The notes beneath the pieces were generated by a model. The model saw only the letters and a program-made list of their open reading frames with translations, was not told the origin of the DNA and did no database searches. Below are positions 1-57,135 of a stretch of DNA of 64,000 bases, one piece after another; within the stretch, counting starts at the first letter, position 1, and each line of letters begins with the position of its first letter. The translations under genes were made by a program, and so were the position numbers. Where the stretch lies: positions 151,657-215,656 of the IMG/VR virus record IMGVR_UViG_3300046694_000296. One strand, 5' to 3'.

Positions 1-895
1 GCCGGTGCCCGCAGCGCTCAATTCGCGCAAGGGTCCGATCGAAATCACCGTGTTCGCCTCGCCGCGTGACGCCGATATGGTGCCGGCGATCGACCCCGGC
101 TTCATCTTCGATATCGAAAACCTGCGCAACGCGATCATGGCGCTCGAACTCCGCAAGAACCTCTACGTGTGGGGTCACGCCGGAACGGGCAAGACGACGC
201 TCATCGAACAGATCATGGCGCGCACCGGGCGGCCGGTGATTCGCGTGCAGCACTCGATCGGCACCGAAGAGTCGCACGTCCTCGGTCAGTGGGTGGTGCG
301 CGGCGGTCAGACCGAGTTTCAACCGGGCCTGCTCCCGCTCGCGATGCGCAACGGCTGGACCTACCTCGCCGACGAATACGACTTCGGTAACCCCGCGGTC
401 CTCGCCGTGTATCAACCGATCCTCGAACCGGGCAAGAGCCTCGTCATCAAGGACGCACCCGACGAGTGGCGTGTGGTGAAACCGCACGAGAACTTCCGCT
501 TCGTCGCAACGGGCAACACGAACGGTTCCGGTGACGACACGGGCCTCTATCAAGGCACGCAGATTCAGAACGCCGCGAACTATGACCGTTTCGGCATGGT
601 GCTCGAGGCGACCTACATGCAGCCGGAGCTCGAGTCGGCGATTCTGGTGCAGCGCAGCCGGATTCAGAAGAAGAACGCCGATCAGCTGGTGGACTTCGCG
701 AACCGCGTGCGCGAAGCCTATAAGAACAAGGAGATCGCGAGCACCATCTCGCCGCGATGCCTGATCGACGCGGCCGACATCGGTCTGCGACGCGCGAACT
801 GGCGCTTGGGCGTGACGCTCTCCTTCATCAACAAGCTCTCTGCGGTGGACCGCGCTGTCGTTGACGGCGTTGCATCGCGAATTCTCGACAAGTAA
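1..895 (+). CDS. MoxR/CobS-like AAA+ ATPase (probably 5'-truncated by the window edge)
   Basis: Walker A GHAGTGKT, Walker B YLADEYD, 'HENFRFVATGNTNG' and 'ISPR' sensor motifs typical of MoxR/CobS/NorQ AAA+ proteins. Confidence 0.85.
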   Translation, partial: PVPAALNSRKGPIEITVFASPRDADMVPAIDPGFIFDIENLRNAIMALELRKNLYVWGHAGTGKTTLIEQIMARTGRPVIRVQHSIGTEESHVLGQWVVRGGQTEFQPGLLPLAMRNGWTYLADEYDFGNPAVLAVYQPILEPGKSLVIKDAPDEWRVVKPHENFRFVATGNTNGSGDDTGLYQGTQIQNAANYDRFGMVLEATYMQPELESAILVQRSRIQKKNADQLVDFANRVREAYKNKEIASTISPRCLIDAADIGLRRANWRLGVTLSFINKLSAVDRAVVDGVASRILDK

Positions 896-920
896 CCTAG
901 TAAGTAACGGATTACCAATC

Positions 921-1559
921 ATGCTGCAATCGGCCCAATCGACTATCAATACCCGCACCTCGACCCGCTACGAGGACCACACCGGCATGCTGCACAAACT
1001 CGCAAAGCGCGGCTGGGGCCGATTGCAGGAGGCAGGGCTCGACGTGACCTACGAGGACGTCTACCAGCATATGTGCGAGAGCTTCGTGAAGTGCCAGTCC
1101 ACCTACAAGGTCGACACCGGCTTCTCGTTCTCGGCGTATTACGGTCGCTCGATCTGGAACAACTTCAACCACTGGGCCGAGCGCCAGATCGAGGAGAAGC
1201 ATACGCTTGGCCTCGTCTCGGTCGAGAGCCTGTGCGGCAGCGACGACGAAGGCGAAACCGACGTGTTCGAATTCATCGAGCAAGAGGACGACGAAGAGAC
1301 GCCTGAAGACCGGCTCGCCGCGCGTCAGGAGTCGCACCGGCTTGCCCGCATGCTCTCGGACGATGCCAAGCGCATGGTCGCGCTGCTCGCGCACCAGACC
1401 CCGGCGCTCGAACAGTGGATGGACGAGCGCAACGCGCGCATGTTGAAAAAGACCTACCAAATCAACCTGTGGCTCATTGGCGAGTTCCTGGGTTTCGAGC
1501 GCAAGAAGGTGAGTCGCCTGCGCCTGGAGCTGGAGCGCGTCTACGGCGTGGAGCTGTGA
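921..1559 (+). CDS. sigma70-like transcription factor
   Basis: Region-2-like segment (YEDVYQHMCESFVKC...FSFSAYYGRSIWN) and C-terminal HTH-like segment (LWLIGEFLGFERKKVSRLR); ATG at 921. Confidence 0.55.
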   Translation: MLQSAQSTINTRTSTRYEDHTGMLHKLAKRGWGRLQEAGLDVTYEDVYQHMCESFVKCQSTYKVDTGFSFSAYYGRSIWNNFNHWAERQIEEKHTLGLVSVESLCGSDDEGETDVFEFIEQEDDEETPEDRLAARQESHRLARMLSDDAKRMVALLAHQTPALEQWMDERNARMLKKTYQINLWLIGEFLGFERKKVSRLRLELERVYGVEL

Positions 1560-2173
1560 TGAGCCACCCGAGCTGCTTCGGGCTGCCGTCGGTGTTCACC
1601 GCGAGCACGCAGACCTGCACGGCGTGCGCCTCGCGCAGCGAATGCGTGAGCGCCTGCTATTCGATGCTCGTCTCGCTCTCGGACAAGATCGACGTGACGG
1701 CCCCGCTCGCGCAGCTAGAGCGCACGGCCCGCGTCGTGACCGCGCAGTCGATACCCGCGCACGCGGTCGCAACGACGATCGCGGCGCCCGCGCCCGCCGC
1801 AGTGCAGGTGAACCTGGCGCACGGTGAGCGCGAGCATGACCTTCTTACGAGCCTGCCTGTGCGGGTGCAAAAGGTGATGCGCCCGCTTCTCAAGCGCGGC
1901 GGGGATGCCCGCGCACGCCTTGCGCTCGCGAAAGGGCAGAACCCCTTCGACGGGCGCGGCCCGCAGTGGTTGCGCCTTGCCGGTGAAAAGCTCCTCGCCG
2001 GCAGCTTCACCAAGGGCGAGCTGCGGCACGCCTACATCAACGAATACGGCTGGTCGGAGTCGACCGCCTTCTCGCGCGTGTCCATCGTCGTGTCGGTGAT
2101 TCCGGCGTTGCGTCTGGGCCGCGTCAGGGGCGACACGGTGCTTCGTGCGCCGACGCTCGCCCGGGATCATTGA
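1559..2173 (+). CDS. hypothetical protein: Cys-rich N-terminus, possible C-terminal winged helix
   Basis: Start overlaps upstream stop (TGATG); SCFG...CTAC...EC; 'KGELRHAYINEYGWSESTAFSRVS' is HTH-like. Confidence 0.55.
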   Translation: MSHPSCFGLPSVFTASTQTCTACASRSECVSACYSMLVSLSDKIDVTAPLAQLERTARVVTAQSIPAHAVATTIAAPAPAAVQVNLAHGEREHDLLTSLPVRVQKVMRPLLKRGGDARARLALAKGQNPFDGRGPQWLRLAGEKLLAGSFTKGELRHAYINEYGWSESTAFSRVSIVVSVIPALRLGRVRGDTVLRAPTLARDH

Positions 2174-2204
2174 AGCATCAACCCATTCACCGCAGGAGCT
2201 CAAG

Positions 2205-5200
2205 TTGAATATCAAGCACCTCCTGTCCGCGCGCAGCGATTTCTCGCTCGGGGAGTCCACCTTGCAGGTCGGCACCCTGATCGACACCGCGAAGGCGCAG
2301 GGCTATGAGACGGTCGCCCTCGTGGACAACATGACCATCTCCAACATGGTCGCGTTCACCGACAAGGCGAAGAAAGCGGGGATCAAGCCGATCGTGGGCT
2401 GCACGATTCGCATGGTCGACGATCCGACCTACCGCAAGCCGCCGAAGGCGTCGGGTGAGGTCGAGCGTCCGAACCCGCTCGTCATGCTCAAGGTCTACGC
2501 CAAGACCGACGCGGGCCTGCGCAGCCTCATGAAGCTGCTCTCCAAGGGAAACAGCCCGGAATACTTCTACTACCACTCGCGCGTGGGCCTCGAGGACGTG
2601 CTGCAGCTGGAGGAGTGCGCGGTGAGCACGGGCGACTTCTATGGCCTGTTCCATCACAAGCGCTGGGAGGAGATCGCATACCGGCTAAGCGAAAAGTTCG
2701 GCCGCGACTTCTGCGTCGAATTCGTGCCCGGCGGCACGCCGCTGCACAAGACGCTCAACAAGCTCGCGCTCCTTTGCCACGACCGCTTCATTTCGACGCC
2801 GATCGGCACCTGGCCCGCGCTCTATGCGACCGACGATCAAGCCGACAGCCTCGACGTGCTGCGCGCGATTCTCGGCAACAACAAGATGACCGACAGGTGG
2901 CTCAACAAGCCCTACCTGCGCAACTTCTCGATCCGCGCGCCGGGCGATCTGGTGCGCGCGCTCGTCGCGGAAGGCTTGCCCGCGAAGGAGATCATCAACG
3001 GCAACCAGGCGCTTGTCGATTCGTGCACGTTCGAATTCAAGAAGCTCGAGCCGTGTCTGCCGAAGATGGCCGACGACGAGTTTCTGGCGCTGGTCGAGCA
3101 GGTCAAGAAAGGCTGGGCGCAGCGCTTCGCCGCGCCCGTGCTCGGGCATCAGCCCGCGCCCGAAGAGCTGCCGCAATACAAAGCGCGCCTCGCTTACGAA
3201 CTGGACGTGCTGCGCAAGATGGGCTTCTCGGGCTACTTCCTGCTGGTGCAGCACATCGTGCAGTGGAGCAAGCAAAACGGCATTCTGGTCGGCCCCGGCC
3301 GCGGTTCGGTAGGTGGGAGCCTCGTCGCCTATCTGATGGGAATCACTGACGTCGATCCGATCCGCTTCAACCTGCTGTTCGAGCGTTTCATCAATCCTGA
3401 GCGTCTTGACTTGCCCGACGCCGACCTCGACTTTATGTCCAAGCGCCGGCATGAGGTGATCGACTACATCGCCGAGCACTTCGGGCGCGAGAACGTCGCG
3501 GGCGTGTCCAACTACAACACGATGGGCGCCGCGGGCGTGATGCGCGATACCTCGCGCGTGCACGAACTCAACCCGTTCGACTACGCCTGCTCGAAGCAGA
3601 TGGAAAAGCAGCACGGGGTTTCCCTCTCGCTGGAAGAGTCCGCTGCGATCGTGCCGGAGATCGACAAGTTCAAGGGCCAGTTTGCCGGCATCTGGAAGCA
3701 TATGGTCAACCTCGAAGGCGCGGCGCGCGGGCTCGGGCAGCACGCCGCCGGTGTGATCGTCGCGGGTGAGCCGATCATCAACCGCGCCGTGGTCGAGACA
3801 CGCACCGGCGGGCCGGTGTGCAATTGGGACAAGCGCACGGTCGAGGACTTCGGGCTCATCAAGATGGACATCTTGGGCCTGACCAACCTCGACGTGATGA
3901 AGCTCGCGGCCGACTACATCAAGGAGCGACACGGCAAGTCGATCGACTTCCTGCGTCTGCCGCTCGATGACAAGAAGGTGATGGAGGCATTCGGGCGGGG
4001 CGACACCACGGGCGTGTTCCAGTTCGAGTCGCCCGGCATGCGTCGGTTGCTGCGCGAGATGGCGCTCGCGGGTCCGGTGACCTTCGACGACCTCGTGGCG
4101 GTGGTCGCGCTCTATCGTCCGGGTCCGCTCGACGCGGGTCTGTGCGACGACTACGTGGCGATCAAGCAAGGGTCCAAGCAACCCTACTACGAGCACCCGA
4201 ACATGGCGCCCGCGCTGAAGGACACCTACGGGGTGATCGTGTATCAGGAGCAGGTGATGCAGATCGCGCGGGACTTGGCGGGCTTCACGATGGCCGGCGC
4301 CGACCACCTGCGTAAAGCGATGGGCAAGAAGGACAAGGAGAAGATGGCCGAGATGCGCCAGAAGTGGGTCGATGGCTGTATGACGCACTCAGGCATGTCC
4401 GAAGGCACGGCGCACGCGCTCTTTGACAAGATCGAAGTGTTCGCCGGCTACGCCTTCAACAAGTCGCACTCGGTGGAATATGCGGTGATTTCATTCTGGA
4501 CGATGTGGCTCAAGTGCTACTACCCGGCCGAATACTTCGCCGCCTCGCTCACCGAAATCGACAAAGAAGAGAAGCGCGAACCGCTCGTGCAGGACGCGCG
4601 GCGCATGGGCATGCAGGTCTTGCCACCCGACATCAACCATTCGAGCGCACGGGTAGAGATCGTGGGCGAGGACAAGCTCTACGCCCCGTTCCAGGCGCTC
4701 AAGGGTCTGTCCGAGAAGGCTGCGGGCTACATCGTCGATGCGCGCAACAAGTGGGGCAAGCCCTTTGCCAACCGCACCGACCTCGACGCGGCACTGAAGG
4801 CGGCGGAATACTCGGGCCGGCACATCAACCAGAGCGTGAAGGACAAGCTGGTGCTCATTGGTGCCTTCGCCGAGTGCGAGGGCGACAAGGTGCCCGCCAT
4901 GCACCCCGATCGGCTGAAAAACCGCATCGAGCTTCTGCCAGGTTTCACGGTCGATACTGTGAAAGCTGATCGAACGCTCAACGCTGAGCACCTTGCCTTG
5001 CTGCAACTGGTGCGCATCGGTGAGGAGACGCGCTCATGCGAGAAGTGTTCGCTCAAGGGCGGCTGTCACCCGATGCCGCGCATCGGTAAGACGCCGAAGT
5101 TCATGGTGGTGTCCGACAACCCGAACTGGCAGGAGGAGAAGGCGGGCAAGCTGCTCGAAGGCGACAACGCGAAGCTCGTCATCAACGCACTGAAGGAAGC

Positions 5201-5549
5201 GGGGCTCTCGGCGCAGGACGGCTATTTCACCACGCTGGTGAAGTCGGGCAAGCCGAAGGAGCAGAAGACGCTCACCAACGAGCAGATAAATGCGTGTAGC
5301 CAATATCTGCAGCGTGAGCTTGAAGTCCTCAAGCCACCAGTCATCGTAACGCTCGGCTCAAATGCCGCCCGTTTCTTCGCGCCGACTGTAAAGGGTGGAT
5401 CAATGGAGTTGGCTGGGAAAGTTATCTTCGATCCAAAGCGCGATGCGTCGATTGTGTTCGGGATCAATCCGGGTCAAATCTTCCACGATCCGGGCAAGTA
5501 TGCGGTCCTTCAGACGGTGGCAGCAAAAGTAGCTGATTTGGTCAGTTGA
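2205..5549 (+). CDS. dnaE: DNA polymerase III alpha (family C) with C-terminal uracil-DNA-glycosylase family-4-like domain
   Basis: PHP N-terminus, GPGRGS, ERF.NPER..PDADLDF, KMDILGL, GVFQFES, YAFNKSHS; probable TTG start at 2205 after AGGAG. Confidence 0.95.
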   Translation: MNIKHLLSARSDFSLGESTLQVGTLIDTAKAQGYETVALVDNMTISNMVAFTDKAKKAGIKPIVGCTIRMVDDPTYRKPPKASGEVERPNPLVMLKVYAKTDAGLRSLMKLLSKGNSPEYFYYHSRVGLEDVLQLEECAVSTGDFYGLFHHKRWEEIAYRLSEKFGRDFCVEFVPGGTPLHKTLNKLALLCHDRFISTPIGTWPALYATDDQADSLDVLRAILGNNKMTDRWLNKPYLRNFSIRAPGDLVRALVAEGLPAKEIINGNQALVDSCTFEFKKLEPCLPKMADDEFLALVEQVKKGWAQRFAAPVLGHQPAPEELPQYKARLAYELDVLRKMGFSGYFLLVQHIVQWSKQNGILVGPGRGSVGGSLVAYLMGITDVDPIRFNLLFERFINPERLDLPDADLDFMSKRRHEVIDYIAEHFGRENVAGVSNYNTMGAAGVMRDTSRVHELNPFDYACSKQMEKQHGVSLSLEESAAIVPEIDKFKGQFAGIWKHMVNLEGAARGLGQHAAGVIVAGEPIINRAVVETRTGGPVCNWDKRTVEDFGLIKMDILGLTNLDVMKLAADYIKERHGKSIDFLRLPLDDKKVMEAFGRGDTTGVFQFESPGMRRLLREMALAGPVTFDDLVAVVALYRPGPLDAGLCDDYVAIKQGSKQPYYEHPNMAPALKDTYGVIVYQEQVMQIARDLAGFTMAGADHLRKAMGKKDKEKMAEMRQKWVDGCMTHSGMSEGTAHALFDKIEVFAGYAFNKSHSVEYAVISFWTMWLKCYYPAEYFAASLTEIDKEEKREPLVQDARRMGMQVLPPDINHSSARVEIVGEDKLYAPFQALKGLSEKAAGYIVDARNKWGKPFANRTDLDAALKAAEYSGRHINQSVKDKLVLIGAFAECEGDKVPAMHPDRLKNRIELLPGFTVDTVKADRTLNAEHLALLQLVRIGEETRSCEKCSLKGGCHPMPRIGKTPKFMVVSDNPNWQEEKAGKLLEGDNAKLVINALKEAGLSAQDGYFTTLVKSGKPKEQKTLTNEQINACSQYLQRELEVLKPPVIVTLGSNAARFFAPTVKGGSMELAGKVIFDPKRDASIVFGINPGQIFHDPGKYAVLQTVAAKVADLVS

Positions 5550-5592
5550 GCCTCACTATACTCGGTAGCGTCTAGTAAGTAACAGGTGACAT

Positions 5593-6090
5593 ATGGAACA
5601 GTGGAAAGACGTCGTTGGCTACGAAGGGCGCTATCAGGTATCGGATCTCGGCAATGTGCGCAGCTTGCCGAATGCAACACGCTCGGGGGTCCGGCTTTTG
5701 GCGCTCAACACATTTCGCAACGGCTACAAATACGTGAACCTCTATCGAGGCACGTCAAAGAAGGAGAAGTGGCTCGTGCACATGCTGGTCGCGCAGGCAT
5801 TTATTGGCTCTGCACCGGTCGGGCAAGAAGTTCGGCACCGCGACGGCGTGCGCGGGAACTGCGCGCTTACCAACCTATGTTACGGAACGCGAGTAGAGAA
5901 CCAAGCAGATCGGATCGAGCATGGGACGTCTAATCAAGGCGTTAGGCATCCCCGCGCCAGGCTCGTAGAGACGCAAGTATTGGAGATTAGAAACTCCAAT
6001 GAGATCGCTTCAACATTAGCAGCAAAGTATTCAGTTTCAGAGTCGCTGATCCACCAGATCAAGCGATGCCAAGTATGGCGACACATTTAA
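5593..6090 (+). CDS. NUMOD4/HNH homing endonuclease
   Basis: EQWKDVVGYEGRYQVSDLGNVRS (NUMOD4), VHMLVAQAF...RHRDGVRGNCALTNL (HNH); lower GC than neighbours. Confidence 0.9.
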   Translation: MEQWKDVVGYEGRYQVSDLGNVRSLPNATRSGVRLLALNTFRNGYKYVNLYRGTSKKEKWLVHMLVAQAFIGSAPVGQEVRHRDGVRGNCALTNLCYGTRVENQADRIEHGTSNQGVRHPRARLVETQVLEIRNSNEIASTLAAKYSVSESLIHQIKRCQVWRHI

Positions 6091-6106
6091 CACTCAAGGA
6101 ACGAAC

Positions 6107-6763
6107 ATGACAACTGACACCTTCTCCGTCGAGGAAATCGGCGCAATCGTCGGCGATATCGAGAACCCGCCCGTCGGCGGCACGAACGCAGCTGCCACCG
6201 CGCCCACTGTCGCCGCCTCCGCCAACGCACCGGCCGCGCAGCCTGCGGCAACCGTCTCGGGCCTGAAGGTCTTCGTGGATGCCGACCAGCTGAAGAAGGA
6301 TCTGGCGGTCAACCCGAACGATCTGGACGACGCGGTGACCAGCCAAGCGCCGATGTTCGTGCACTACGCGCAGCAAGCCGCGTATGCGCGCCGCCAGTAT
6401 GAGAAGAGCAAGCTCGCCGCTGAGATCATGGAAAGCCAGCTCGATAGCGCCTGGCGCAAGAAGCTCGCGGAAGACGGCGGCAAGGTGACCGAGAAGATGG
6501 TCGAGAACGCCGTGAAGGCCGATCCGCGCTATGCGAAGGCACACAATCAGGTGATCGAGGCCCGGGCGCTCTTTGACATCGCGAACGACGCGCGTGAAGC
6601 CTATATGCAGCGCAAGGACATGATCGTGCAGGTGTCGGTCGATCGCCGTCGCGAGCGCGAAGGGCAGATGCGCATTCTCGCGGCGAAGGAAGGCGAGAAC
6701 GCAACGCAGTCGGGCCGTGAAGCCGCGCTCGCCGCAGAAGCCGCGCGCCGCCAAGCCGCCTGA
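6107..6763 (+). CDS. UvsY-like recombination mediator (putative)
   Basis: Helical protein with 'KVTEKMVENAVKADPRY'; next to SSB and RecA. Confidence 0.5.
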   Translation: MTTDTFSVEEIGAIVGDIENPPVGGTNAAATAPTVAASANAPAAQPAATVSGLKVFVDADQLKKDLAVNPNDLDDAVTSQAPMFVHYAQQAAYARRQYEKSKLAAEIMESQLDSAWRKKLAEDGGKVTEKMVENAVKADPRYAKAHNQVIEARALFDIANDAREAYMQRKDMIVQVSVDRRREREGQMRILAAKEGENATQSGREAALAAEAARRQAA

Positions 6764-6912
6764 CAGGATCTTTTAACTTTTGCGTGGTCCGGTGAGTCAC
6801 CCGTTACTATACTTAAGAGGGCAGGGTGAGACGGTGAAGCGAGAGCACACCGGATCGTCCGCAAAACCTGTGACTTACGACCTAAAAACTTCTGACTAAG
6901 GAAAACGAAACT

Positions 6913-7920
6913 ATGTCTACTGCTCAACTGATGGAACTGCTTGCGAAGCGCAAGGCTGCAACGGGCGGCGCAAAAACGATCAAGCCGAAGGCTGGTCGCA
7001 ACCGCTACCGCATCCTCCCGGGCTGGCGCACCAACGGCGACCCGACGTTCTTCCACGACTTCGGTCAGCACTTCATCAAGGACGCAGCGGGTCAGGTGAA
7101 GGCAGTCTACATCTGTGCGGACAAGACCTTCGGTCGTCCGTGCGAGGTGTGCGACGCGGTGGCACAAGGCATCGCCGCATCGACCGATGACGTGACGAAA
7201 AAGCGCATCGAGGAAGCGAAGTCGAGCGGCCGCGTGTTGCTCAACGTCCTCGAGCTCGACGGCACGCAGCCGACGGTGCCGCAGATCCTCGAAGTCGCGC
7301 CCTCGGTGTTCAACGGCAAGAAGGGCGTCGGCGGCATCATCGCGCTGTTCGACGAATGGCCCAACATGCTCGATCCGAACACCGGCCACGACATCATCGT
7401 CGAGAAGTCGGGCTCGGGCCTCGACACCGCCTACAGCGTGCAGATCGCGGGCTCCTCGAAGCCGGTCCCAGCCGAAGCGCTCACGAAGCTGGTTGACCTC
7501 GACGCCTACGTGATGCAGGAAAACGCGCAAGCGCAGCAGCGTGCACTCGCCTCGGTTCGCGCCGTCGCAGGTCTGCCTGCTCCGACGCAGACCTACGCAC
7601 CGGCAGCCCTGCCGCCGGGCGCAGCGAACGCCTACACCGCGCAAGAGCCGGCACCGTGGGAAGCCGACGACACGCTCGACATCGGCTCGTTGTCGAACCC
7701 GGTAGCGGCCGCAGCAGTGGCCCAGCCGGTCGCAGCACCGGCACCGGCACCGGCGGCGCCCGCAGCAACCGTGGAAGTCGCAGCAGCGGTCGCAGCGGTT
7801 GCTACGCAGCCGGTCGCAGCAGCCGCTCCCGCAGCGGTGGCCCAGCCCGTAGCCGCAGCCGCCCCGGCAGCAGCAGGCACGGGTGACCCGGAGCTCGACG
7901 CTCTGCTCGCGGGCCTGTAA
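6913..7920 (+). CDS. single-stranded DNA-binding protein, gp32-like
   Basis: RYRILPGW, HDFGQHF, C..TFGRPCEVC zinc site, DPNTGHDIIVEK, Ala/Pro-rich tail ending in acidic-hydrophobic residues. Confidence 0.7.
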   Translation: MSTAQLMELLAKRKAATGGAKTIKPKAGRNRYRILPGWRTNGDPTFFHDFGQHFIKDAAGQVKAVYICADKTFGRPCEVCDAVAQGIAASTDDVTKKRIEEAKSSGRVLLNVLELDGTQPTVPQILEVAPSVFNGKKGVGGIIALFDEWPNMLDPNTGHDIIVEKSGSGLDTAYSVQIAGSSKPVPAEALTKLVDLDAYVMQENAQAQQRALASVRAVAGLPAPTQTYAPAALPPGAANAYTAQEPAPWEADDTLDIGSLSNPVAAAAVAQPVAAPAPAPAAPAATVEVAAAVAAVATQPVAAAAPAAVAQPVAAAAPAAAGTGDPELDALLAGL

Positions 7921-7941
7921 TCGAAGCCTGATGTAACGACC

Positions 7942-7970
7942 AGCGGCGAGGCTCACCCCTCGCCGCTTTT
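7942..7970 (+). terminator. intrinsic terminator after SSB
   Basis: AGCGGCGAGG-CTCACC-CCTCGCCGCT followed by TTT. Confidence 0.65.
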
Positions 7971-7988
7971 CAATGAGAGGTTTCGATA

Positions 7989-8930
7989 GTGGCAAAGAAC
8001 ACCATCCTCGTCGACGGCAACAGCATCGGGCGAGCCTCGCACAAGGGCACCGTGCTGACCGTGGGTAGCTTCCAGACGCAAGCCATCTTCGGCTTCGTGC
8101 GCTCAATGGGCGCGCTCTACCGCGACTACCCCGCCTTCAACGCGTCGTTTGTCCTGTGGGACGGCAGGGCCGATCATCGCTATGCGATCTACCCCGACTA
8201 CAAGTTGAAGCGCGCAGAGGCGATGAGCGACCCGGAAGTGAAAGCCGACAAAGAGGCATACAACGCGCAGCTGCCGTTCATCAAGAAGGCGCTCGACATG
8301 CTCGGCGTGCCGCAGATGGTCAATTCGGCGCTCGAAGCTGACGACCTCGCGGGCTACTTCGTGCCGCGTCTGACGAAGACGGGCAAGGTGCTACTCGTCA
8401 CGGGCGACTCAGACTGGTGGCAGCTCGTCGGCCCTGACTGCGATTGGTTTGATCCTCGCAAAGCGGGAATGTATGTGTCGATCGCCGACTTCTTCCAGAA
8501 GACGGGCTACTTCACCCCGGACGAATACATCGAGGGCAAGGCGCTGATCGGGGATTCGACCGACGACATTCCGCCGGCCGGTGGCATCGGCAAGAAGGGC
8601 GCACCCGAATTCATGGCGCAGTTCCGCTCGATGGAGAAGTTCCGCGCGCTCTGTGACTCGGGCGAGTTCCAGCCAAAGCTCAAGAAGCACGTCGAGCTGT
8701 GGAAGGGCGAGAGCCGCCGCAACTGGGACAGGAACATGCAGCTGATGGACCTGCGCAACGCGCCCGCACCGGACCCGGCCAAGACGACGATCATCCCGGG
8801 CACGCTCAACGAGGATGGGTTTCGCGCGCTGTGTGAGCGCCTTGCATTTCGGTCGATTCTTGCGCAATGGGATCACTTCATGAACCCATTTCGCCAACGC
8901 TACGAGGCGCGTCTCGCACGCGCCGCCTGA
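7989..8930 (+). CDS. 5'-3' exonuclease / flap endonuclease (PolI-N, T4 RNase H-like)
   Basis: ILVDGNS, YPDYK..R, EADDLAG, TGDSDWWQL, LIGDSTDDIP..GIGKK. Confidence 0.9.
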   Translation: MAKNTILVDGNSIGRASHKGTVLTVGSFQTQAIFGFVRSMGALYRDYPAFNASFVLWDGRADHRYAIYPDYKLKRAEAMSDPEVKADKEAYNAQLPFIKKALDMLGVPQMVNSALEADDLAGYFVPRLTKTGKVLLVTGDSDWWQLVGPDCDWFDPRKAGMYVSIADFFQKTGYFTPDEYIEGKALIGDSTDDIPPAGGIGKKGAPEFMAQFRSMEKFRALCDSGEFQPKLKKHVELWKGESRRNWDRNMQLMDLRNAPAPDPAKTTIIPGTLNEDGFRALCERLAFRSILAQWDHFMNPFRQRYEARLARAA

Positions 8931-21177: not shown

Positions 21178-22050
21178 ATGATCGAAGTCAATGGCAAGAA
21201 CTGCCGCGTGCGCGTCATTGCGCACAGCGTCCCGGATTTTCGCGACAACGCGAAGGAAATCTTTACGCTGGAGTTGCGTTACTGGCGGGCGGTGCATTCC
21301 GAGCTTATGACGCACCGCGACTTCAGCCGCAACGCCGGCTCGTCGCGAGCGATCCCGGTCGCCAAGATGATCGAGCAGGTCCGCAACGACCCGGCCGGCC
21401 CGCTGCATTGGGGCAAGAACCAGCCCGGCATGAAAGCGCAAGAAGAACTCACGCTTGACCAGCAGGAGCACGCGAAGATCATTTGGCGCGACGCGGCGAA
21501 CGCAGCGGCCGACTACGCTCAGCAGATGATGGATCTCGGGCTGCACAAGCAAGTCGCCAACCGGGCTCTTGAGCCGTATCAGTGGATCAACGTGCTCGTC
21601 ACCTCGACGGAATGGGACAACTGGTTCAATCTGCGCGCGCACGCCGACGCCCAGCCCGAGATTCAAGACCTCGCCTACACCATGCGCGACGCGATGGAGC
21701 AGAGCACGCCGGTCAAGCGCGGCATCAAGCGCGACAGCGAAAACGGGTGGCACCTGCCGTATGTGCTTGACAGCGAGCGCGAATTCATTCGCCTCGACGT
21801 GCTCAAGAAGCTCTCGACGGCCCGCTGCGCGCGCCTGTCCTATGAGCCCTTTGACGGCAACGCGGCGATCGAGAAGGAGATCGAGCGCTACAACCTACTG
21901 GTCGGCAGCGAGCCGCTGCACGCATCGCCCACTGAGCACCAAGCCTGCCCGCTGCCGGCCGGCTCGGATCAAAGCCGCAACTTCCGGGGTTGGCACCAGT
22001 ATCGCGTGAACGTCGAGGCAGACGCTTATCTGGCGAAGCGCGCAGCGTAA
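21178..22050 (+). CDS. thyX: flavin-dependent thymidylate synthase (ThyX/Thy1-like, phage type)
   Basis: ELMTHRDFSRNAGSSRAIP, HKQVANR.LEP, HASPTEHQA. Confidence 0.8.
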   Translation: MIEVNGKNCRVRVIAHSVPDFRDNAKEIFTLELRYWRAVHSELMTHRDFSRNAGSSRAIPVAKMIEQVRNDPAGPLHWGKNQPGMKAQEELTLDQQEHAKIIWRDAANAAADYAQQMMDLGLHKQVANRALEPYQWINVLVTSTEWDNWFNLRAHADAQPEIQDLAYTMRDAMEQSTPVKRGIKRDSENGWHLPYVLDSEREFIRLDVLKKLSTARCARLSYEPFDGNAAIEKEIERYNLLVGSEPLHASPTEHQACPLPAGSDQSRNFRGWHQYRVNVEADAYLAKRAA

Positions 22051-22135
22051 TGCAACGGTAACGGGTTGCCTCACTATACTGATAAGTAACCCGTTACACA
22101 CGGTTAAAACGAAACCTCTACAGGAGCAACACCTC

Positions 22136-22816
22136 ATGACCGAAGCCGCAAACATGAACACGATGGACAACACGACCTACCACGCTGAAGTCCTGTCGAC
22201 CGAATCGAAGCCCGACGCGATCAACTTCGGCCCGGCGACGCTGATGATGGCGCTGAACCTCGCCGTGCAAGCGGGCAACCTGCTCGACCAGATCAAGCGC
22301 GCCGTGTTCTACGGCAAGGACATCGACCCGCAGATCGCCGGCCAGGCGCTGCAAGCGATTCCTGCGATGGCGAACGACATCAAGTTCCCGCTCGCGACGG
22401 ATCGCTACCGCGACCCGCGCGACGCCGATTTCTACAACAGCATCGACCCGAAGGCGAAGGAAATCCTGTCGCTGCATGGCGTGGACGTGCGCCTGCTGCA
22501 CGCGGCCCTCGGTCGCTTTACCGAGTCCACCGAGTTCATCGAGGCGCTGGTCCCGACGTTCTTCGGTCAGGTGTTCGACAAGGTGAACGGTCTGGAAGAA
22601 ATCGGCGACGGCCGCTGGTATGACGAGATTGCGCTCGACGCACTCGGCTACACCGCGGAGCAGTGCAACTTCACGAACATCAAGAAGCTGAAGGACAAGA
22701 AGGCGGGCCGCTACCAGAAGGGCGCGTTCGATCCGAACGCTGCAGTGGATCGTGACACGACCGCCGAGCGCGCACTGCTCGAAGCGGGCGCGGCCACCGA
22801 AGCACAGGCGGCGTAA
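22136..22816 (+). CDS. MazG-like NTP pyrophosphohydrolase
   Basis: LLHAALG..TE..E, DKVNGLEEIGD..WY, NIKKL...RY. Confidence 0.75.
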   Translation: MTEAANMNTMDNTTYHAEVLSTESKPDAINFGPATLMMALNLAVQAGNLLDQIKRAVFYGKDIDPQIAGQALQAIPAMANDIKFPLATDRYRDPRDADFYNSIDPKAKEILSLHGVDVRLLHAALGRFTESTEFIEALVPTFFGQVFDKVNGLEEIGDGRWYDEIALDALGYTAEQCNFTNIKKLKDKKAGRYQKGAFDPNAAVDRDTTAERALLEAGAATEAQAA

Positions 22817-23443
22817 GTGATTGGGCTTGCAGGTTCGCAAAGAACGGGCAAGTCCACGCTCGCGAAGGCGTATGCGGAGGAGTCGGGGGTGAAGTTCATC
22901 GCCACCGGCGCTTCGGCCACCTTCGCGCGTCTTGGACTGGATCCAAAGAAGGACTACGACTTCGCGACGCGCCTGCGCACACAGCGTGAAATTCTCGCCG
23001 ACTGCGACCGGCTCTATGACAGCGCAGGGGTGCGCTTCATCACCGACCGCACGCCGATCGACTTTCTCGGTTACACGCTCGCCGATGTCACACGCGAGAA
23101 CGTGCGCGGGAAGCTCGAAGTGGAGCTGCAGCGCTACGTTGACGATTGCTACGCCTGTGCGAATAAGCACTTCACCGTGCTCATCCTCGTGCAGCCGGGC
23201 ATCGCGCTCGTCGAGGCAGAAGGCAAGGCGCCGGCAAGTCCGTCGTATATGGCGCACGTGAACGCGCTGATGCTGGGCCTGATGGCTGACGAAGCACTGC
23301 AAGCCGACCACTACAAGATTCCGCGCCGGGCCATCGAGCTCGAGATTCGGATCAGCGCGGTCGAGGAAGCAGTGCGGAAGTCAGCGCAGCGCCACGTCGC
23401 GAAGATGGAGCGATTGCACGAAGACGGGCTGGTGCTGCACTAG
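22817..23443 (+). CDS. P-loop nucleotide kinase (dNMP kinase/AAA_28-like)
   Basis: IGLAGSQRTGKST, FITDRTPID. Confidence 0.75.
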   Translation: MIGLAGSQRTGKSTLAKAYAEESGVKFIATGASATFARLGLDPKKDYDFATRLRTQREILADCDRLYDSAGVRFITDRTPIDFLGYTLADVTRENVRGKLEVELQRYVDDCYACANKHFTVLILVQPGIALVEAEGKAPASPSYMAHVNALMLGLMADEALQADHYKIPRRAIELEIRISAVEEAVRKSAQRHVAKMERLHEDGLVLH

Positions 23444-27491: not shown

Positions 27492-27625
27492 TGCTGCCTC
27501 ATAGCAGTTGAAAGCAGCGATGCTAGCGAGTTCCTGCGTCGAACACAAACTCCAAAATGTATACGCAGCGGGCCGACCAGCGCTCACTATACTGAGTAAC
27601 AGGTAACTTATTTATTGAGGTGTGT

Positions 27626-28207
27626 ATGACCCGAATCGCGGGCCTTGACCTAGAAACCACGGGCCTTGACCAGTCGGCCGGACATCGGATCATCGAAGTC
27701 GCGGTGACGCTCCACGAGCTCGAAACCGAGCGCTTCCTGGGCAAATACGTCCAGCGTATCAACCCGCAGCGTGCCATCGACCCCGATGCGCAGCGCGTGC
27801 ACGGGATCACCTTCGAGCAGCTGGCGCACGAGCCGACGTGGGAACAGGTCGCGCCGAACGTCCACCGCGTGCTCTCTGCGGTGCGCTACATGGCCGGGCA
27901 CAACATCATCGGCTTCGACTGGCCGTTCCTCTCAGGCGAGTTCAAGCGCATCGGCATGGCGGTCCCCGAGCTGGAGCTCATCGACACGATGGTGGACGCC
28001 CGCTGGGCGACGCCGCTGGGCAAGCTCCCGAATCTCTCGGAGCTCTGTTTTGCCACCGGTATCGAGTATGACCCGAGCCAAGCACACGGCGCCCTATACG
28101 ACATCGACGTAAACATGAATGCGTATTTCGCCGCGCGTCGCATGGGCTTCTTCGGCCCGCAAATCGTTCAACCCGTTCCCGCAATCGTGGAGGAAGCAAC
28201 AGCATGA
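27626..28207 (+). CDS. DEDDh 3'-5' exonuclease (DnaQ/epsilon-like)
   Basis: GLDLETTG, HGIT, GHN..GFD, IDTM, AHGALYD. Confidence 0.9.
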   Translation: MTRIAGLDLETTGLDQSAGHRIIEVAVTLHELETERFLGKYVQRINPQRAIDPDAQRVHGITFEQLAHEPTWEQVAPNVHRVLSAVRYMAGHNIIGFDWPFLSGEFKRIGMAVPELELIDTMVDARWATPLGKLPNLSELCFATGIEYDPSQAHGALYDIDVNMNAYFAARRMGFFGPQIVQPVPAIVEEATA

Positions 28208-54059: not shown

Positions 54060-54707
54060 ATGACAACTACTCCGACAGCTCTCCGTGTTTCCGTTGACGC
54101 GCTTCGTGCAAATCCGTGGAACACCAACAGCCTCACACCCGAGAACGAAGCGAAGCTCGATGCTTCCATCGTGCGCTTCGGCGTCTACAAGCCGATCGTC
54201 GTGCGCCCGCACCCGGACGGCGAGGGCTACGAAATTCTGGGCGGTCAGCATCGGTGGGAGGCAGCGCGCCGCGCGGGCCACGCTGATGTGCTGATCGTCA
54301 ACGTCGGCCCCGTGTCTGATCTGACGGCCAAAGAGATTGGCCTCGTCGACAACGGCCGCTACGGCGAAGACGACACGCTGGCGCTCTCGCGCTTGCTCAA
54401 GGAGATGGGCGTCGAGGACATCGGCACCTTCCTTCCCTACACCGACGGCGAGCTGGAAAACATTCTCGCTGCTTCAAGTATAGATCTCGACGACCTAGAC
54501 AAGCTGGATGAGGCCGAAATGCCTGATCTGTCGGGTCCGGGCGTGGGCGCCACGCATCAGGTGATGCGCTTCAAGGTGCCTGTCGAGGATGTCGCGTGGG
54601 TCACGAGCGCCATCGAGCGCCGCCAGCGCGAGGCCGGTTTCACCACCGAAGACTCCATGACGAACGCCGGCATGGCCTTCGTCGATCTGATGAAGGCATA
54701 CAAATGA
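54060..54707 (+). CDS. ParB/Srx N-terminal-domain protein
   Basis: LRANPWNTN, GVYKPIVVRP, EILGGQHRWEAA; no obvious HTH. Confidence 0.8.
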   Translation: MTTTPTALRVSVDALRANPWNTNSLTPENEAKLDASIVRFGVYKPIVVRPHPDGEGYEILGGQHRWEAARRAGHADVLIVNVGPVSDLTAKEIGLVDNGRYGEDDTLALSRLLKEMGVEDIGTFLPYTDGELENILAASSIDLDDLDKLDEAEMPDLSGPGVGATHQVMRFKVPVEDVAWVTSAIERRQREAGFTTEDSMTNAGMAFVDLMKAYK

Positions 54708-56089: not shown

Positions 56090-56806
56090 ATGACCACATA
56101 CACCATCGACAAGCGCTTCCACACGCGCGTCGCGCGCAGCCAGCGCGTCGTGGAAGTCGCTGAAGCGTTCGGCCTTGGGCTGGACGACAAGGAATTCGTG
56201 ATCTTCGACCAGCTGAAGCTGGACGTCGCGCAAGGCGACGTGATCTACATCACCGGCCAGTCCGGCAGCGGCAAGTCGCTGCTCCTGCGCGAGCTGTCCG
56301 CGCAGATGGCCGCCGAAGGCCAGAAGGTCGCGAACCTCGATGAGGTGGCGATCGACCCGGATGCGCCGCTCATCGACCAGATCGGCACCAGCACGAACGA
56401 TGCGATCCGGCTGCTCTCGATTGCCGGCCTGAACGACGCGTATCTCTTCATCCGCAAGCCCGGCGAGCTCTCCGACGGCCAGCGCTACCGCTTCAAGCTC
56501 GCCAAAGCCATCGAGTCGCAGGCCGACGTCTGGGTCGCTGACGAGTTCATGGCGGTGCTCGACCGGACCGCGGCCAAGGTGATCGCGTATGCCGTGCAGA
56601 AGACCGCGCGCAAGGTCAACGCGACCGTGATCGTTGCGACTACCCACCTCGACCTCGTGGAAGACCTGCAGCCGTCGCTCTACATCGAAAAAAGGTATCG
56701 AGAAAAGCTGCGCATCGAAGCATTCACCGACCTCAACGCGGCGGCCGAAGGCTCGAAGACCCTCACGCGCGATGAAGCCTACGACCTCATGAAAAGGATG
56801 GCCTGA
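56090..56806 (+). CDS. stand-alone ABC ATPase
   Basis: GQSGSGKS, LSDGQRYR, VADEF, ATTH; no permease nearby. Confidence 0.85.
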   Translation: MTTYTIDKRFHTRVARSQRVVEVAEAFGLGLDDKEFVIFDQLKLDVAQGDVIYITGQSGSGKSLLLRELSAQMAAEGQKVANLDEVAIDPDAPLIDQIGTSTNDAIRLLSIAGLNDAYLFIRKPGELSDGQRYRFKLAKAIESQADVWVADEFMAVLDRTAAKVIAYAVQKTARKVNATVIVATTHLDLVEDLQPSLYIEKRYREKLRIEAFTDLNAAAEGSKTLTRDEAYDLMKRMA

Positions 56807-57135
56807 TGAACCCGAAGTATGAAGCGGCGCTCGAAGCGTCGAAGACCCGCCCGCAAGTCGTGATTTTCACGGCAGCCTGGTGCGGCCCGTGCAAGCTGCT
56901 CAAGCCCGCGCTGCAGGCGCTCAAGGCCGACTACGGCTTTGACTATCACGAGTTCGACGCAGCGGAGTTCGAGCAGGCGGAGTTGCTGACGCTCGGCGTG
57001 CGCAACGTGCCGAACGTGCGCGTGCTCCTGAACACCGTCGTGAAGGCACAGTTCGTCGGCGCGCGCACGAAGGCGCAGGTCGAGGACTGGCTCACGGAGC
57101 TGGGCGTCATCTCGCGCGGACTGAGCTTCGAATGA
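56806..57135 (+). CDS. thioredoxin
   Basis: FTAAWCGPCK, GVRNVP. Confidence 0.9.
   Translation: MNPKYEAALEASKTRPQVVIFTAAWCGPCKLLKPALQALKADYGFDYHEFDAAEFEQAELLTLGVRNVPNVRVLLNTVVKAQFVGARTKAQVEDWLTELGVISRGLSFE

What the first reader, a model, noticed from the sequence alone, without database searches (positions are those of the whole stretch)
5000..5549. DnaE ends in a degenerate family-4 UDG-like domain instead of OB-fold/clamp-binding region
Seen: after the polymerase core comes CEKC..GGCHP...FMVVSDNPNWQEEKAGKLLEG...YFTTLVKS...INACSQYLQRELEVLKPPVIVTLGSNA...INPG. Established: family-4 UDGs have CxxC, GEAPG, VKCRP and HP motifs; SPO1 carries such a domain on a family-A polymerase. Here the catalytic motifs are altered (SDNPN, VKSGKP, NPG). 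Inference: a processivity module or a reader/eraser of non-canonical bases, possibly tied to the proposed DNA modification.
Basis: partly seen in the sequence, partly recalled or inferred. Interest (0 to 1): 0.6.

Follow-up and report, generated by a model that had tools for sequence, protein, structure and literature searches.

The report
Phage DnaE polymerase with UDG-like tail
A phage replicative polymerase of the bacterial Pol III alpha type carries, where the usual OB-fold and tau-binding tail would be, a well-folded and strongly conserved copy of the uracil-DNA-glycosylase fold that has lost the uracil-recognising residues; this layout was already reported in 2013 and is common in ~110-kb phages and phage-plasmids, but its job has never been tested.

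Summary
ORF 2145-5549 (+) encodes a DnaE-type polymerase; its real start is probably TTG 2205, giving 1114 aa. It has PHP, Pol3 core, fingers and (HhH)2 domains. Its last ~175 residues are a family-4 UDG fold: Pfam PF03167 E 6e-15; AF2 pLDDT 91; Foldseek top hits 4zbx, 1l9g and UdgX, TM 0.81-0.84. No OB fold or tau-binding domain is present.

The glycosylase signatures are replaced:
- GE(A/G)PG becomes x-D-x-P-x.
- The stacking Phe becomes L/M.
- The uracil-binding Asn becomes S/T/A.
- The His of HPS becomes Asn.
- The third cluster Cys becomes S/A.

The domain is not decaying. Asp991 and Pro993 are invariant, and dN/dS is 0.037 against 0.092 for the polymerase core.

The architecture is not new. 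Timinskas et al. (2013) described DnaE with OB and CTD replaced by an archaeal-type UDG. PHROG 405 covers it full length. Hundreds of relatives sit in ~105-120 kb phages and phage-plasmids.

The virus record has no clamp, clamp loader, second UDG, ThyA homologue, dUTPase or dCMP deaminase. The proposed link to DNA modification is therefore unsupported.

The most likely role is a non-catalytic template-DNA-binding or processivity tail. An altered reader or glycosylase is not excluded.

New detail: C965, C968, H975 and C1051 are kept or lost together, which suggests a Cys3His metal site.

The parts
2205..5549 (+). DnaE-type (C-family) DNA polymerase gene with C-terminal UDG-like domain. Probable start is TTG 2205 (1114 aa); the longest ORF starts at GTG 2145 (1134 aa). 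Residue numbers in this report follow the 1134-aa numbering.
   Evidence: Start: homologues are 1114 aa and begin at residue 21; GGAG lies 7 nt upstream of the TTG; dN/dS of codons 1-20 is 2.3.
2232..2660 (+). PHP domain (residues 30-172)
   Evidence: Pfam PF02811, E 6.8e-17
3090..4382 (+). Pol III alpha catalytic core and fingers (residues 316-746)
   Evidence: PF07733 E 4.8e-75 and PF17657 E 2.1e-59
4608..4886 (+). (HhH)2 duplex-DNA / 'beta-binding' domain (residues 822-914). This is the last part alignable to cellular DnaE.
   Evidence: PF14579 E 1.5e-11. BLASTP against Salmonella DnaE ends at residue 908.
4887..5021 (+). Conserved linker (residues 915-959) with invariant R923, G933 and R943. 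It contains the motif [RQ]-x-E-L-[ML]-P-G-[FL] at residues 927-934 (nt 4923-4946).
   Evidence: Conservation in 121 and in 79 homologues. There are 0 non-synonymous against 5 synonymous differences between the two copies in the record. pLDDT is 74-78.
5022..5546 (+). Family-4-UDG-like domain (residues 960-1134)
   Evidence: dN/dS 0.037.
5037..5069 (+). C965-x2-C968 and H975: three of the four proposed metal ligands. The fourth is C1051, at nt 5295-5297.
   Evidence: All four are invariant in 121 homologues. They are lost together in L045 and in the Aeromonas, Rhizobium, Stenotrophomonas and Klebsiella versions.
5112..5126 (+). Motif-A equivalent S-D-N-P-N (residues 990-994), in place of G-E-(A/G)-P-G. 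D991 and P993 are invariant.
5232..5246 (+). T1030-L-V-K-S1034, in place of N-x-V-K-C. The uracil-contacting Asn and the third cluster Cys are both replaced.
   Evidence: Role of this Asn: PMC10359453.
5466..5486 (+). Motif-B equivalent N1108-P-G-Q-I-F-H1114, in place of H-P-S-x-x-x-R
   Evidence: Motif definition: PMC10359453.
5593..6090 (+). NUMOD4 + HNH homing-endonuclease-like gene directly downstream of dnaE
   Evidence: PF07463 E 2.4e-15 and PF13392 E 8.4e-11
27620..28207 (+). Separate DnaQ/epsilon-like 3'-5' exonuclease gene, the probable proofreader of this polymerase
   Evidence: PF00929 at G000:179300-179782, 85.6 bits; ORF list

Best explanation
The gene encodes the replicative polymerase of a ~107-kb tailed phage or phage-plasmid. 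The cellular DnaE tail (ssDNA-binding OB fold plus tau-binding CTD) has been swapped for a family-4 UDG fold. That fold no longer has the residues that recognise and excise uracil.

I propose that the domain works as a DNA-handling module. It would grip the single-stranded template (or the fork) ahead of the active site, as the OB fold does in cellular Pol III and as fused or associated UDGs do on A- and B-family viral polymerases. In that role it would give the polymerase intrinsic template hold and processivity in a replisome that has no clamp loader or tau of its own.

Shown here: the fold, the motif replacements, the loss of OB/CTD, the strong purifying selection, the wide distribution of the fusion, and the absence of phage clamp and clamp-loader genes.

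Inferred: DNA binding, position on the template, lack of glycosylase activity, and a Cys3His metal site.
For: - Fold and homology.
- Replaced residues: the water-activating Glu, stacking Phe, uracil-binding Asn, motif-B His and motif-B Arg are all replaced. Their roles are described in PMC10359453.
- Variable pocket positions: the Asn-equivalent position varies (T/S/A), as do positions 990, 992 and 994. This argues against a specific base pocket.
- Selection: dN/dS is 0.037 for the domain, 0.092 for the core, and there are no non-synonymous changes in the linker.
- Fixed fusion: the domain is fused in more than 200 proteins, 193 IMG/VR loci, 20 phage records and 258 plasmid records with near-full coverage.
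- Charge: the domain is basic like real UDGs, with median pI 8.3.
- Integrated model: the full-length AF2 model has pLDDT 88 and pTM 0.74, with the tail at pLDDT 80-90.
- No partners for the lost tail: the record has no beta clamp, gp45-type clamp or clamp-loader family. The tau-binding CTD therefore has no phage partner.
- Precedents: in phiLo and YerA41 PolA the UDG domain binds the 5' template strand ahead of the active site; N4-like PolA carries an inactive UDG that has been proposed as a processivity module; poxvirus UDG contacts the template ahead of a B-family polymerase (PMC13697223; PMC10201439; PMC3201878).
Against: - An acidic residue (D991) is kept at the position of the catalytic Glu in every member examined, even at 23% identity. 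N1108-P is nearly universal. This would also fit a retained chemical function.
- No DNA-binding or processivity measurement exists for any member.
- I could not read coordinates from the models, so where the domain sits relative to the template path is unknown.
- Clamp absence rests on Pfam HMMs over a virus record only, and the host clamp could still be used.
Confidence: 0.45

Rival explanations
1. The domain is still a base-flipping reader or glycosylase with changed specificity. It would scan the template ahead of the polymerase (read-ahead) and use Asp991 and Asn1108 in a remodelled pocket, sensing or excising uracil or another non-canonical base.
For: - D991 and P993 are invariant, N1108 is in 94% and W995 is mostly kept. 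D991 is kept in all distant versions.
- Selection is very strong.
- UDG families with Asn or Asp in motif A and without the motif-B His are active (motifs GQDPY, GINPG; PMC5449639 abstract).
- Fused active UDGs excise dU ahead of the fork in SP15-like PolA (PMC13697223).
- The record has no other UDG and no trimeric dUTPase.
Against: - The base-contacting positions (Asn equivalent 1030; positions 992 and 994) vary freely among close relatives.
- The stacking Phe and the motif-B Arg are gone.
- The Klebsiella and Stenotrophomonas versions also lose P993.
- No hmU or hypermodification genes were found.
- N4-like PolA shows that inactive UDG fusions persist.
Confidence: 0.25
2. The UDG fold has been re-used as a protein-docking platform. 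It would replace the tau-binding CTD and couple the polymerase to the phage helicase, primase, gp32-like SSB or the separate epsilon-like exonuclease.
For: - It replaces exactly the part of DnaE that binds tau.
- The phage encodes its own helicase, SSB, exonuclease and RecA but no tau or clamp loader.
- In A. baumannii phage-plasmids the (HhH)2+UDG-like part is a separate 421-aa polypeptide, so it must assemble by protein contacts.
- The poxvirus UDG is a structural subunit of the polymerase holoenzyme.
Against:
- The conserved residues map to the former active-site motifs rather than to an obviously new surface.
- This role is compatible with DNA binding and not exclusive of it.
Confidence: 0.15
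3. The domain is a decaying, functionless remnant of a once active fused glycosylase.
For: The catalytic motifs are altered, and the metal-binding residues have been lost in several lineages.
Against: - dN/dS is 0.037, lower than in the polymerase core.
- Mean column identity is 64% across 65 homologues, with many invariant residues.
- The domain is retained in every full-length relative found.
- The fold is predicted with confidence.
Confidence: 0.03

Closest known systems
DnaE variant with OB and CTD replaced by an archaeal-type UDG domain (the 'DnaEX' architecture of Timinskas, Balvociute, Timinskas and Venclovas, NAR 2013/14, PMC3919608); PHROG 405
   Same: It has the same domain order, PHP-Pol3-(HhH)2-UDG(PF03167). 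The full-length match to phrog_405 has E 3e-294. The paper reports it as an additional polymerase in some Yersinia and Salmonella strains. Relatives here sit on ~105-120 kb phages and phage-plasmids.
   Different: This copy comes from a high-GC Burkholderiales-type phage; its nearest named relatives are from Paraburkholderia and Burkholderia at 83-89%. The paper gives no analysis of motif state, selection or metal site, and no function.
Family-4 uracil-DNA glycosylases (S. tokodaii 4zbx, T. maritima 1l9g/1vk2, T. thermophilus 1ui0) and UdgX (6ail)
   Same: Same fold, with TM 0.75-0.84 and 20-25% identity. Shared features are the N-terminal CxxC, the last cluster Cys, the K of V-K-C, the L-K-P strand and overall basic charge.
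   Different: Motif A, motif B, the stacking Phe, the uracil-binding Asn and the third Cys are all replaced. It lacks the KRRIH R-loop of UdgX. It scores below the TIGR00758, NF040953 and TIGR03914 cut-offs. It is fused to a polymerase.
UDG-PolA fusions: SPO1-like and SP15-like (active UDG) and N4-like (inactive UDG)
   Same: A family-4-type UDG fold is built into a phage replicative polymerase. N4-like enzymes have also lost the catalytic residues and are proposed to use the domain for processivity. In the phiLo and YerA41 structures the UDG holds the 5' template strand. The domain model also hits phiLo PolA 9qhs and many PolA fusions.
   Different: Those polymerases are A-family and the UDG is N-terminal. 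Here the polymerase is C-family and the UDG is C-terminal, replacing OB/CTD. This is an independent fusion.
Methanobacterium virus PhiF1 DnaE-superfamily polymerase with N-terminal family-4 UDG
   Same: A C-family-type polymerase joined to a family-4 UDG.
   Different: The PhiF1 domain is N-terminal and nearly canonical. Its motif A reads G-L-N-P-G, and it keeps the Phe, the N-x-V-K-C and the H-P-S. It is probably active.
Poxvirus D4/E4 UDG as polymerase processivity subunit
   Same: A UDG fold is used as a structural part of a replicative polymerase holoenzyme and contacts the template ahead of the active site.
   Different: That one is a family-1 UDG, enzymatically active, acts in trans through A20/A22, and works with a B-family polymerase.

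Membership tests
UDG superfamily (Pfam PF03167 fold) | Sequence match above the gathering score, and the alpha/beta UDG fold | tested here: met
   56 bits against a cut-off of 24.3. Foldseek TM 0.81-0.84 to 4zbx, 1l9g and 1ui0.
Family-4 UDG as an active enzyme (TIGR00758 / NF040953) | Score above the curated NCBIfam cut-off | tested here: not met
   63.5 bits against 125.3, and 69.5 against 250
Family-4 UDG as an active enzyme (TIGR00758 / NF040953) | Motif A G-E-(A/G)-P-G with the water-activating Glu | tested here: not met
   The sequence is S-D-N-P-N; the family pattern is x-D-x-P-[NST]. Motif definition.
Family-4 UDG as an active enzyme (TIGR00758 / NF040953) | Motif B H-P-S-x-x-x-R | tested here: not met
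   The sequence is N-P-G-Q-I-F-H. Asn is present in 94% of relatives, and no Arg is present.
Family-4 UDG as an active enzyme (TIGR00758 / NF040953) | Uracil-contacting Asn before V-K-C, and the stacking Phe | tested here: not met
   T1030 (T/S/A in the family) and L1004 (L/M in the family)
Family-4 UDG as an active enzyme (TIGR00758 / NF040953) | Four Cys ligands of the 4Fe-4S cluster | tested here: not met
   Three are kept (C965, C968, C1051). The third canonical Cys is S/A. An invariant H975 co-varies with the three Cys. Metal content was not measured.
Family-4 UDG as an active enzyme (TIGR00758 / NF040953) | Uracil excision activity | not testable with these tools
   Needs an enzyme assay
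UdgX | R-loop K-R-R-I-H with the cross-linking His, and motif A G-E-Q-P-G | tested here: not met
   The loop is absent in alignment A2, where the UdgX-like P0139 and P0142 show it. TIGR03914 scores 52.8 against 189.95.
DnaE-type C-family polymerase (Pol III alpha) | PHP + Pol3 core + fingers + (HhH)2 | tested here: met
   TIGR00594 scores 716.7 bits against a cut-off of 434.
DnaE-type C-family polymerase (Pol III alpha) | C-terminal OB fold and tau-binding CTD (DnaE1 equivalog) | tested here: not met
   The models align only to residue ~913. PRK05673 scores 769.9 against 1002. There is no OB hit.
DnaE-UDG fusion family (PMC3919608 variant; PHROG 405) | PHP-Pol3-(HhH)2-UDG on one polypeptide, with a full-length profile match | tested here: met
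   phrog_405 E 3e-294, covering residues 22-1133. The 120 relatives listed all share the same Pfam families.
UDG-PolA fusions (SPO1-, SP15-, N4-like) | A-family polymerase with an N-terminal UDG | tested here: not met
   The polymerase is C-family and the UDG is C-terminal

The most novel reading that the evidence does not exclude
The tail is a neo-functionalised UDG. It would have a remodelled pocket (invariant Asp991 and Pro993, Trp995, Asn1108) and a Cys3His metal centre, and would let a C-family replicase read the template ahead of synthesis. It would sense or remove a base that canonical UDGs do not handle. This would be the C-family counterpart of archaeal uracil read-ahead and of the SP15-like PolA-UDG coupled repair.
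Probability: 0.15. Interest if true: 0.65.

Novelty: new member of a known kind. Interest (0 to 1): 0.35.

Why it matters
UDG folds have now been found attached to A-family (SPO1, SP15, N4), B-family (poxvirus) and C-family (this group) replicases. That points to a recurrent solution for handling the template strand ahead of a viral polymerase.

The DnaE-UDG group is large. It includes clinically common ~110-kb phage-plasmids of Acinetobacter baumannii and Klebsiella, and it is biochemically untouched.

Knowing whether the tail is a DNA grip, a sensor or a docking site would explain how a Pol III-type enzyme replicates >100 kb without its own clamp loader or tau. The apparent Cys4-to-Cys3His change, with repeated complete loss of the site, offers a natural experiment on what the metal cluster in family-4 UDG folds is for.

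Tried and rejected
1. Complex prediction of residues 905-960 (the conserved linker motif) with two copies of the E. coli beta clamp gave no verdict: score 0.04, with the controls not run. This is evidence neither for nor against clamp binding.
2. A search for stand-alone relatives of the domain returned almost only pieces of fused DnaE genes. P0132 (203 aa) proved to be cut by a contig end. No free-living family with this motif set was found at that sensitivity.
3. Phage hit H5 turned out to be the chromosomal Salmonella dnaE. It was used only as a cellular comparator.
4. The Xanthomonas phage JGB6 region is fragmented into short ORFs and was not used.
5. Literature searches for DnaE + UDG + phage and for SSU5 + Pol III found nothing relevant.
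6. The IMG/VR scan with the domain alignment reached only the close clade, at 49% identity or more. The survey of cluster-less lineages therefore rests on five sequences.
7. Model coordinates are not readable here. Ligand geometry of the proposed metal site and the position of the tail on the core could not be measured.
8. The large representative-protein search was not used because the word search and family scans already settled the family.
Full report
**1. What is there**

The window has a 1134-codon ORF on the + strand, 2145-5549. Pfam finds these domains:

| Domain | Residues | E-value |
|---|---|---|
| PHP | 30-172 | 6.8e-17 |
| Pol III alpha core | 316-578 | 4.8e-75 |
| Fingers | 581-746 | 2.1e-59 |
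| (HhH)2, HHH_6 | 822-914 | 1.5e-11 |
| UDG, PF03167 | 982-1094 | 1.2e-13 (5.8e-15 when residues 930-1134 are scanned alone) |

NCBIfam DnaE models align only to residue ~913, which is position 886 of 1146 in PRK05673. The tail hits Arch_udg, UDG_fam4 and UdgX models below their cut-offs. No OB-fold family is hit. After the (HhH)2 domain only 220 residues remain, and a linker plus the UDG fold use all of them.

The true start is probably TTG at 2205:
- Relatives are 1114 aa and begin at residue 21.
- A GGAG lies just upstream of the TTG.
- The 20 upstream codons show 6 non-synonymous against 1 synonymous difference between the two copies in the record.

**2. The tail is a real UDG fold**

- phmmer against PDB sequences gives family-4 UDGs first: S. 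tokodaii 4zbx at E 1.8e-15, then T. maritima 1vk2/1l9g, T. thermophilus 1ui0, then UdgX.
- An AF2 model of residues 915-1134, built on 65 homologues, has pLDDT 91 and pTM 0.88.
- Foldseek puts the same family-4 UDG and UdgX structures on top, with E about 1e-13 and TM normalised by target of 0.81-0.84. It also finds the UDG domain of phiLo PolA, 9qhs.
- In the viral structure library the neighbours are phage UDGs and PolA-UDG fusions.

**3. State of the catalytic machinery**

Alignment with canonical family-4 proteins, read against the roles given in PMC10359453, shows these replacements:

| Canonical feature | In this protein | Across the family |
|---|---|---|
| Motif A G-E-(A/G)-P-G | S-D-N-P-N | x-D-x-P-[NST] |
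| Stacking Phe of P-F-V-G | L1004 | L/M |
| Uracil-contacting Asn before V-K-C | T1030 | T/S/A |
| Third cluster Cys | S1034 | S/A |
| Motif B H-P-S-x-x-x-R | N-P-G-Q-I-F-H | Asn in 94%, no Arg |

The KRRIH loop of UdgX is absent. Uracil-specific excision is therefore unlikely.

'Degenerate' is nevertheless too strong:
- In 121 fused homologues, D991, P993, C965, C968, H975, C1051, Y1027, E1058, P1064, G1071, G1091 and G1106 are invariant. N1108 is in 114 of 121. An independent set of 79 IMG/VR sequences gives the same picture.
- Positions 990, 992, 994, 1030 and 1034 vary.
- Between the two 94%-identical copies of the gene in the virus record, dN/dS is 0.037 for the UDG-like domain and 0.092 for the polymerase core. 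The linker has no non-synonymous change. This is a single pair.

**4. A probable Cys3His metal site**

This point is new, small and inferred. The canonical four-Cys pattern is reduced to C965, C968 and C1051, and an invariant His appears seven residues after the CxxC.

These four residues are kept together in the window protein, in Pseudomonas phage nickie and in the A. baumannii plasmid version. They are lost together in five cases:
- the Aeromonas version;
- the Rhizobium phage RHph_X66 version;
- the Stenotrophomonas phage ANB28 version;
- the Klebsiella version;
- L045, one member of the close clade at 55% identity, which reads S/P/I/G at the four positions.

The rest of the domain, including D991 and the N/S-P of motif B, stays in all of them. 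Co-retention and co-loss suggest one metal site that is dispensable for the domain's main function.

**5. Distribution and prior knowledge**

The architecture is already published. Timinskas et al. [quoted passage not shown] PHROG 405 matches the protein end to end at E 3e-294.

The fusion turned up as follows:

| Source | Count |
|---|---|
| Large protein collection | at least 203 proteins; the 120 listed all carry the same Pfam families; many contigs of 105-116 kb |
| IMG/VR | 193 loci |
| Cultured phages | Pseudomonas nickie, hairong, ZY21 and phiK7B1; ten Rhizobium phage records; Stenotrophomonas ANB28 and BUCTxx99 |
| Plasmid records | 258 with near-full coverage, mostly ~110-kb non-mobilisable replicons of A. 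baumannii; also Cupriavidus, Aeromonas, Rhizobium and Klebsiella |

The nearest named relatives are from Paraburkholderia and Burkholderia, at 83-89% in the tail.

For A-family polymerases the literature distinguishes active UDG fusions (SPO1-like, SP15-like) from inactive ones (N4-like). It proposes processivity or strand handling for the inactive ones (PMC10201439; PMC13697223; PMC3201878). An archaeal virus, PhiF1, has a near-canonical UDG at the N-terminus of a DnaE-like protein. I found no paper testing the function of the C-terminal DnaE-fused domain.

**6. Genomic setting**

The window belongs to a 215,656-bp IMG/VR record. That record is in fact two collinear, related ~107-108 kb genomes joined head to tail. 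They share 77-89% nucleotide identity over the long aligned blocks, at offsets of about 106-110 kb, and there are two dnaE copies.

Genes around dnaE:
- a CobS-like AAA ATPase and a sigma-like protein;
- a NUMOD4-HNH endonuclease;
- a gp32-like SSB, a FEN-type 5'-3' exonuclease and RecA;
- Mre11/Rad50-like proteins and RuvC;
- NrdA and NrdB;
- ThyX, a MazG-like pyrophosphatase and a kinase-like protein;
- an RNase H-like protein and a DnaQ-like exonuclease;
- a helicase and a ParB-like protein;
- terminase, portal and scaffold.

This order is syntenic with Pseudomonas phage nickie.

The whole record lacks the following:

| Family searched | Result |
|---|---|
| Beta clamp, PF00712 | none |
| gp45-type clamp, PF02916 | none |
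| Clamp loader, PF13177 | none |
| Second UDG | none |
| ThyA-type synthase/hydroxymethylase | none |
| Trimeric dUTPase | none |
| dCMP deaminase | none |
| TGT/DpdA | none |

The usual gene set for hydroxymethyl-uracil-based thymidine hypermodification (PMC13697223) is therefore not seen. The proposed tie to DNA modification has no support from the genes tested. The scan of the window's ORFs was not exhaustive.

**7. How it most likely works**

Cellular DnaE uses the OB fold to hold single-stranded template and the CTD to bind tau. This phage has no tau or clamp loader, so the CTD would have no partner. A basic, DNA-binding fold (median pI 8.3) has replaced the OB fold.

Structures of phiLo and YerA41 PolA show the fused UDG holding the 5' template strand ahead of the active site. 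The poxvirus UDG does the same on a B-family enzyme. By analogy I take the tail to be a template-strand or fork grip that adds intrinsic processivity, with glycosylase chemistry lost. I give this a confidence of about 0.45. The full-length model (pLDDT 88, pTM 0.74) is compatible with an integrated rather than free-swinging tail, but this is weak evidence.

Rivals:
- A remodelled reader or glycosylase using the invariant Asp and Asn (about 0.25). This is favoured by the conservation of D991 in all lineages and disfavoured by the variable base-contacting positions.
- A protein-docking platform replacing the tau-binding role (about 0.15). This is favoured by the A. baumannii version, where the (HhH)2+UDG-like part is a separate 421-aa gene product.
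- A functionless remnant (about 0.03). This is contradicted by the selection data.

**8. Clamp binding**

The (HhH)2 'beta-binding' domain is in fact present. The linker also carries a strongly conserved [RQ]-x-E-L-[ML]-P-G-[FL] segment at residues 927-934.

Its distance from the end of the (HhH)2 domain is similar to that of the internal clamp motif of E. coli alpha. The cellular alignment ends at residue 908 here, matching position 872 of the Salmonella record. The position of the E. coli motif at 920-924 is from my own knowledge. In about half of the relatives the segment begins with Q and resembles the clamp-binding consensus (from my own knowledge). This is a lead only, and the one complex prediction gave no verdict.

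**9. Verdict**

The architecture is already described and widespread, so this is a new member of a known kind. Its function is open and experimentally accessible. The added value here is:
- the motif-by-motif state of the tail;
- evidence of strong constraint;
- the Cys3His co-variation;
- the absence of clamp, clamp-loader and modification genes in the genome.

Noticed in passing
whole virus record G000 (window = G000:151657-215656): The 215,656-bp IMG/VR record flagged as having direct terminal repeats is really two collinear, related ~107-108 kb phage genomes joined head to tail. They share 77-89% nucleotide identity over the long blocks at offsets of ~106-110 kb, and every replication gene searched is present twice. 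This is probably an assembly chimera of two strains. The genome size and completeness given for this record should not be trusted.
   Followed up: partly
window 2145-2204: The first 20 codons of the longest dnaE ORF are probably not translated. A TTG at 2205 with an upstream GGAG matches the start of the 1114-aa homologues, and dN/dS upstream of it is 2.3.
   Followed up: yes
window 5037-5069 and 5295-5297: C965, C968, H975 and C1051 are invariant in ~200 relatives and are lost all together in five lineages or sequences. This suggests a Cys3His metal site derived from the Cys4 4Fe-4S site of family-4 UDGs, and one that can be dispensed with.
   Followed up: partly
window 4923-4946: A strongly conserved linker motif [RQ]-x-E-L-[ML]-P-G-[FL] lies between the (HhH)2 domain and the UDG-like domain. 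Its position and, in half the relatives, its sequence recall a beta-clamp-binding motif. The complex prediction gave no verdict.
   Followed up: partly
window 5593-6090; L011 (A. baumannii pV_JAB144) 1545-7070: A NUMOD4+HNH homing-endonuclease-like gene sits right after dnaE. In A. baumannii ~110-kb phage-plasmids the homologous dnaE is broken into three separately framed pieces (residues 23-388, 388-744, 746-1134), with a NUMOD4 gene between the last two. The last piece is annotated 'uracil-DNA glycosylase family protein'. PHROGs 13169, 21652 and 4335 correspond to these pieces. Whether introns, inteins or true split subunits are involved was not examined.
   Followed up: partly
window 27620-28207: A stand-alone DnaQ/epsilon-like exonuclease gene (PF00929, 85.6 bits) is the likely proofreading partner of the phage DnaE.
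   Followed up: no
window 21178-23443: A nucleotide-metabolism cluster holds ThyX-type thymidylate synthase (phrog_85, E 1e-80), a MazG-like pyrophosphatase and a weak thymidylate-kinase-like protein. The record has no ThyA, trimeric dUTPase, dCMP deaminase or TGT.
   Followed up: partly
window 54060-54707 and 56090-58109: A ParB-like gene is followed by two ORFs that PHROGs labels as ABC-transporter ATP-binding proteins. Many close relatives are circular ~110-kb plasmids, so this suggests a phage-plasmid lifestyle.
   Followed up: no
window 2-1559: A CobS/CbbQ-like AAA+ ATPase and a sigma-70 region-2-like protein lie just upstream of dnaE. Pseudomonas phage nickie has CobT and CobS next to its dnaE in the same position, and the A. 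baumannii plasmid has a sigma factor there.
   Followed up: no
L004 (Methanobacterium virus PhiF1) 4016-8387: An archaeal virus carries a near-canonical family-4 UDG (G-L-N-P-G, N-x-V-K-C, H-P-S) at the N-terminus of a DnaE-superfamily polymerase. This fusion is independent of, and opposite in orientation to, the one studied here.
   Followed up: partly
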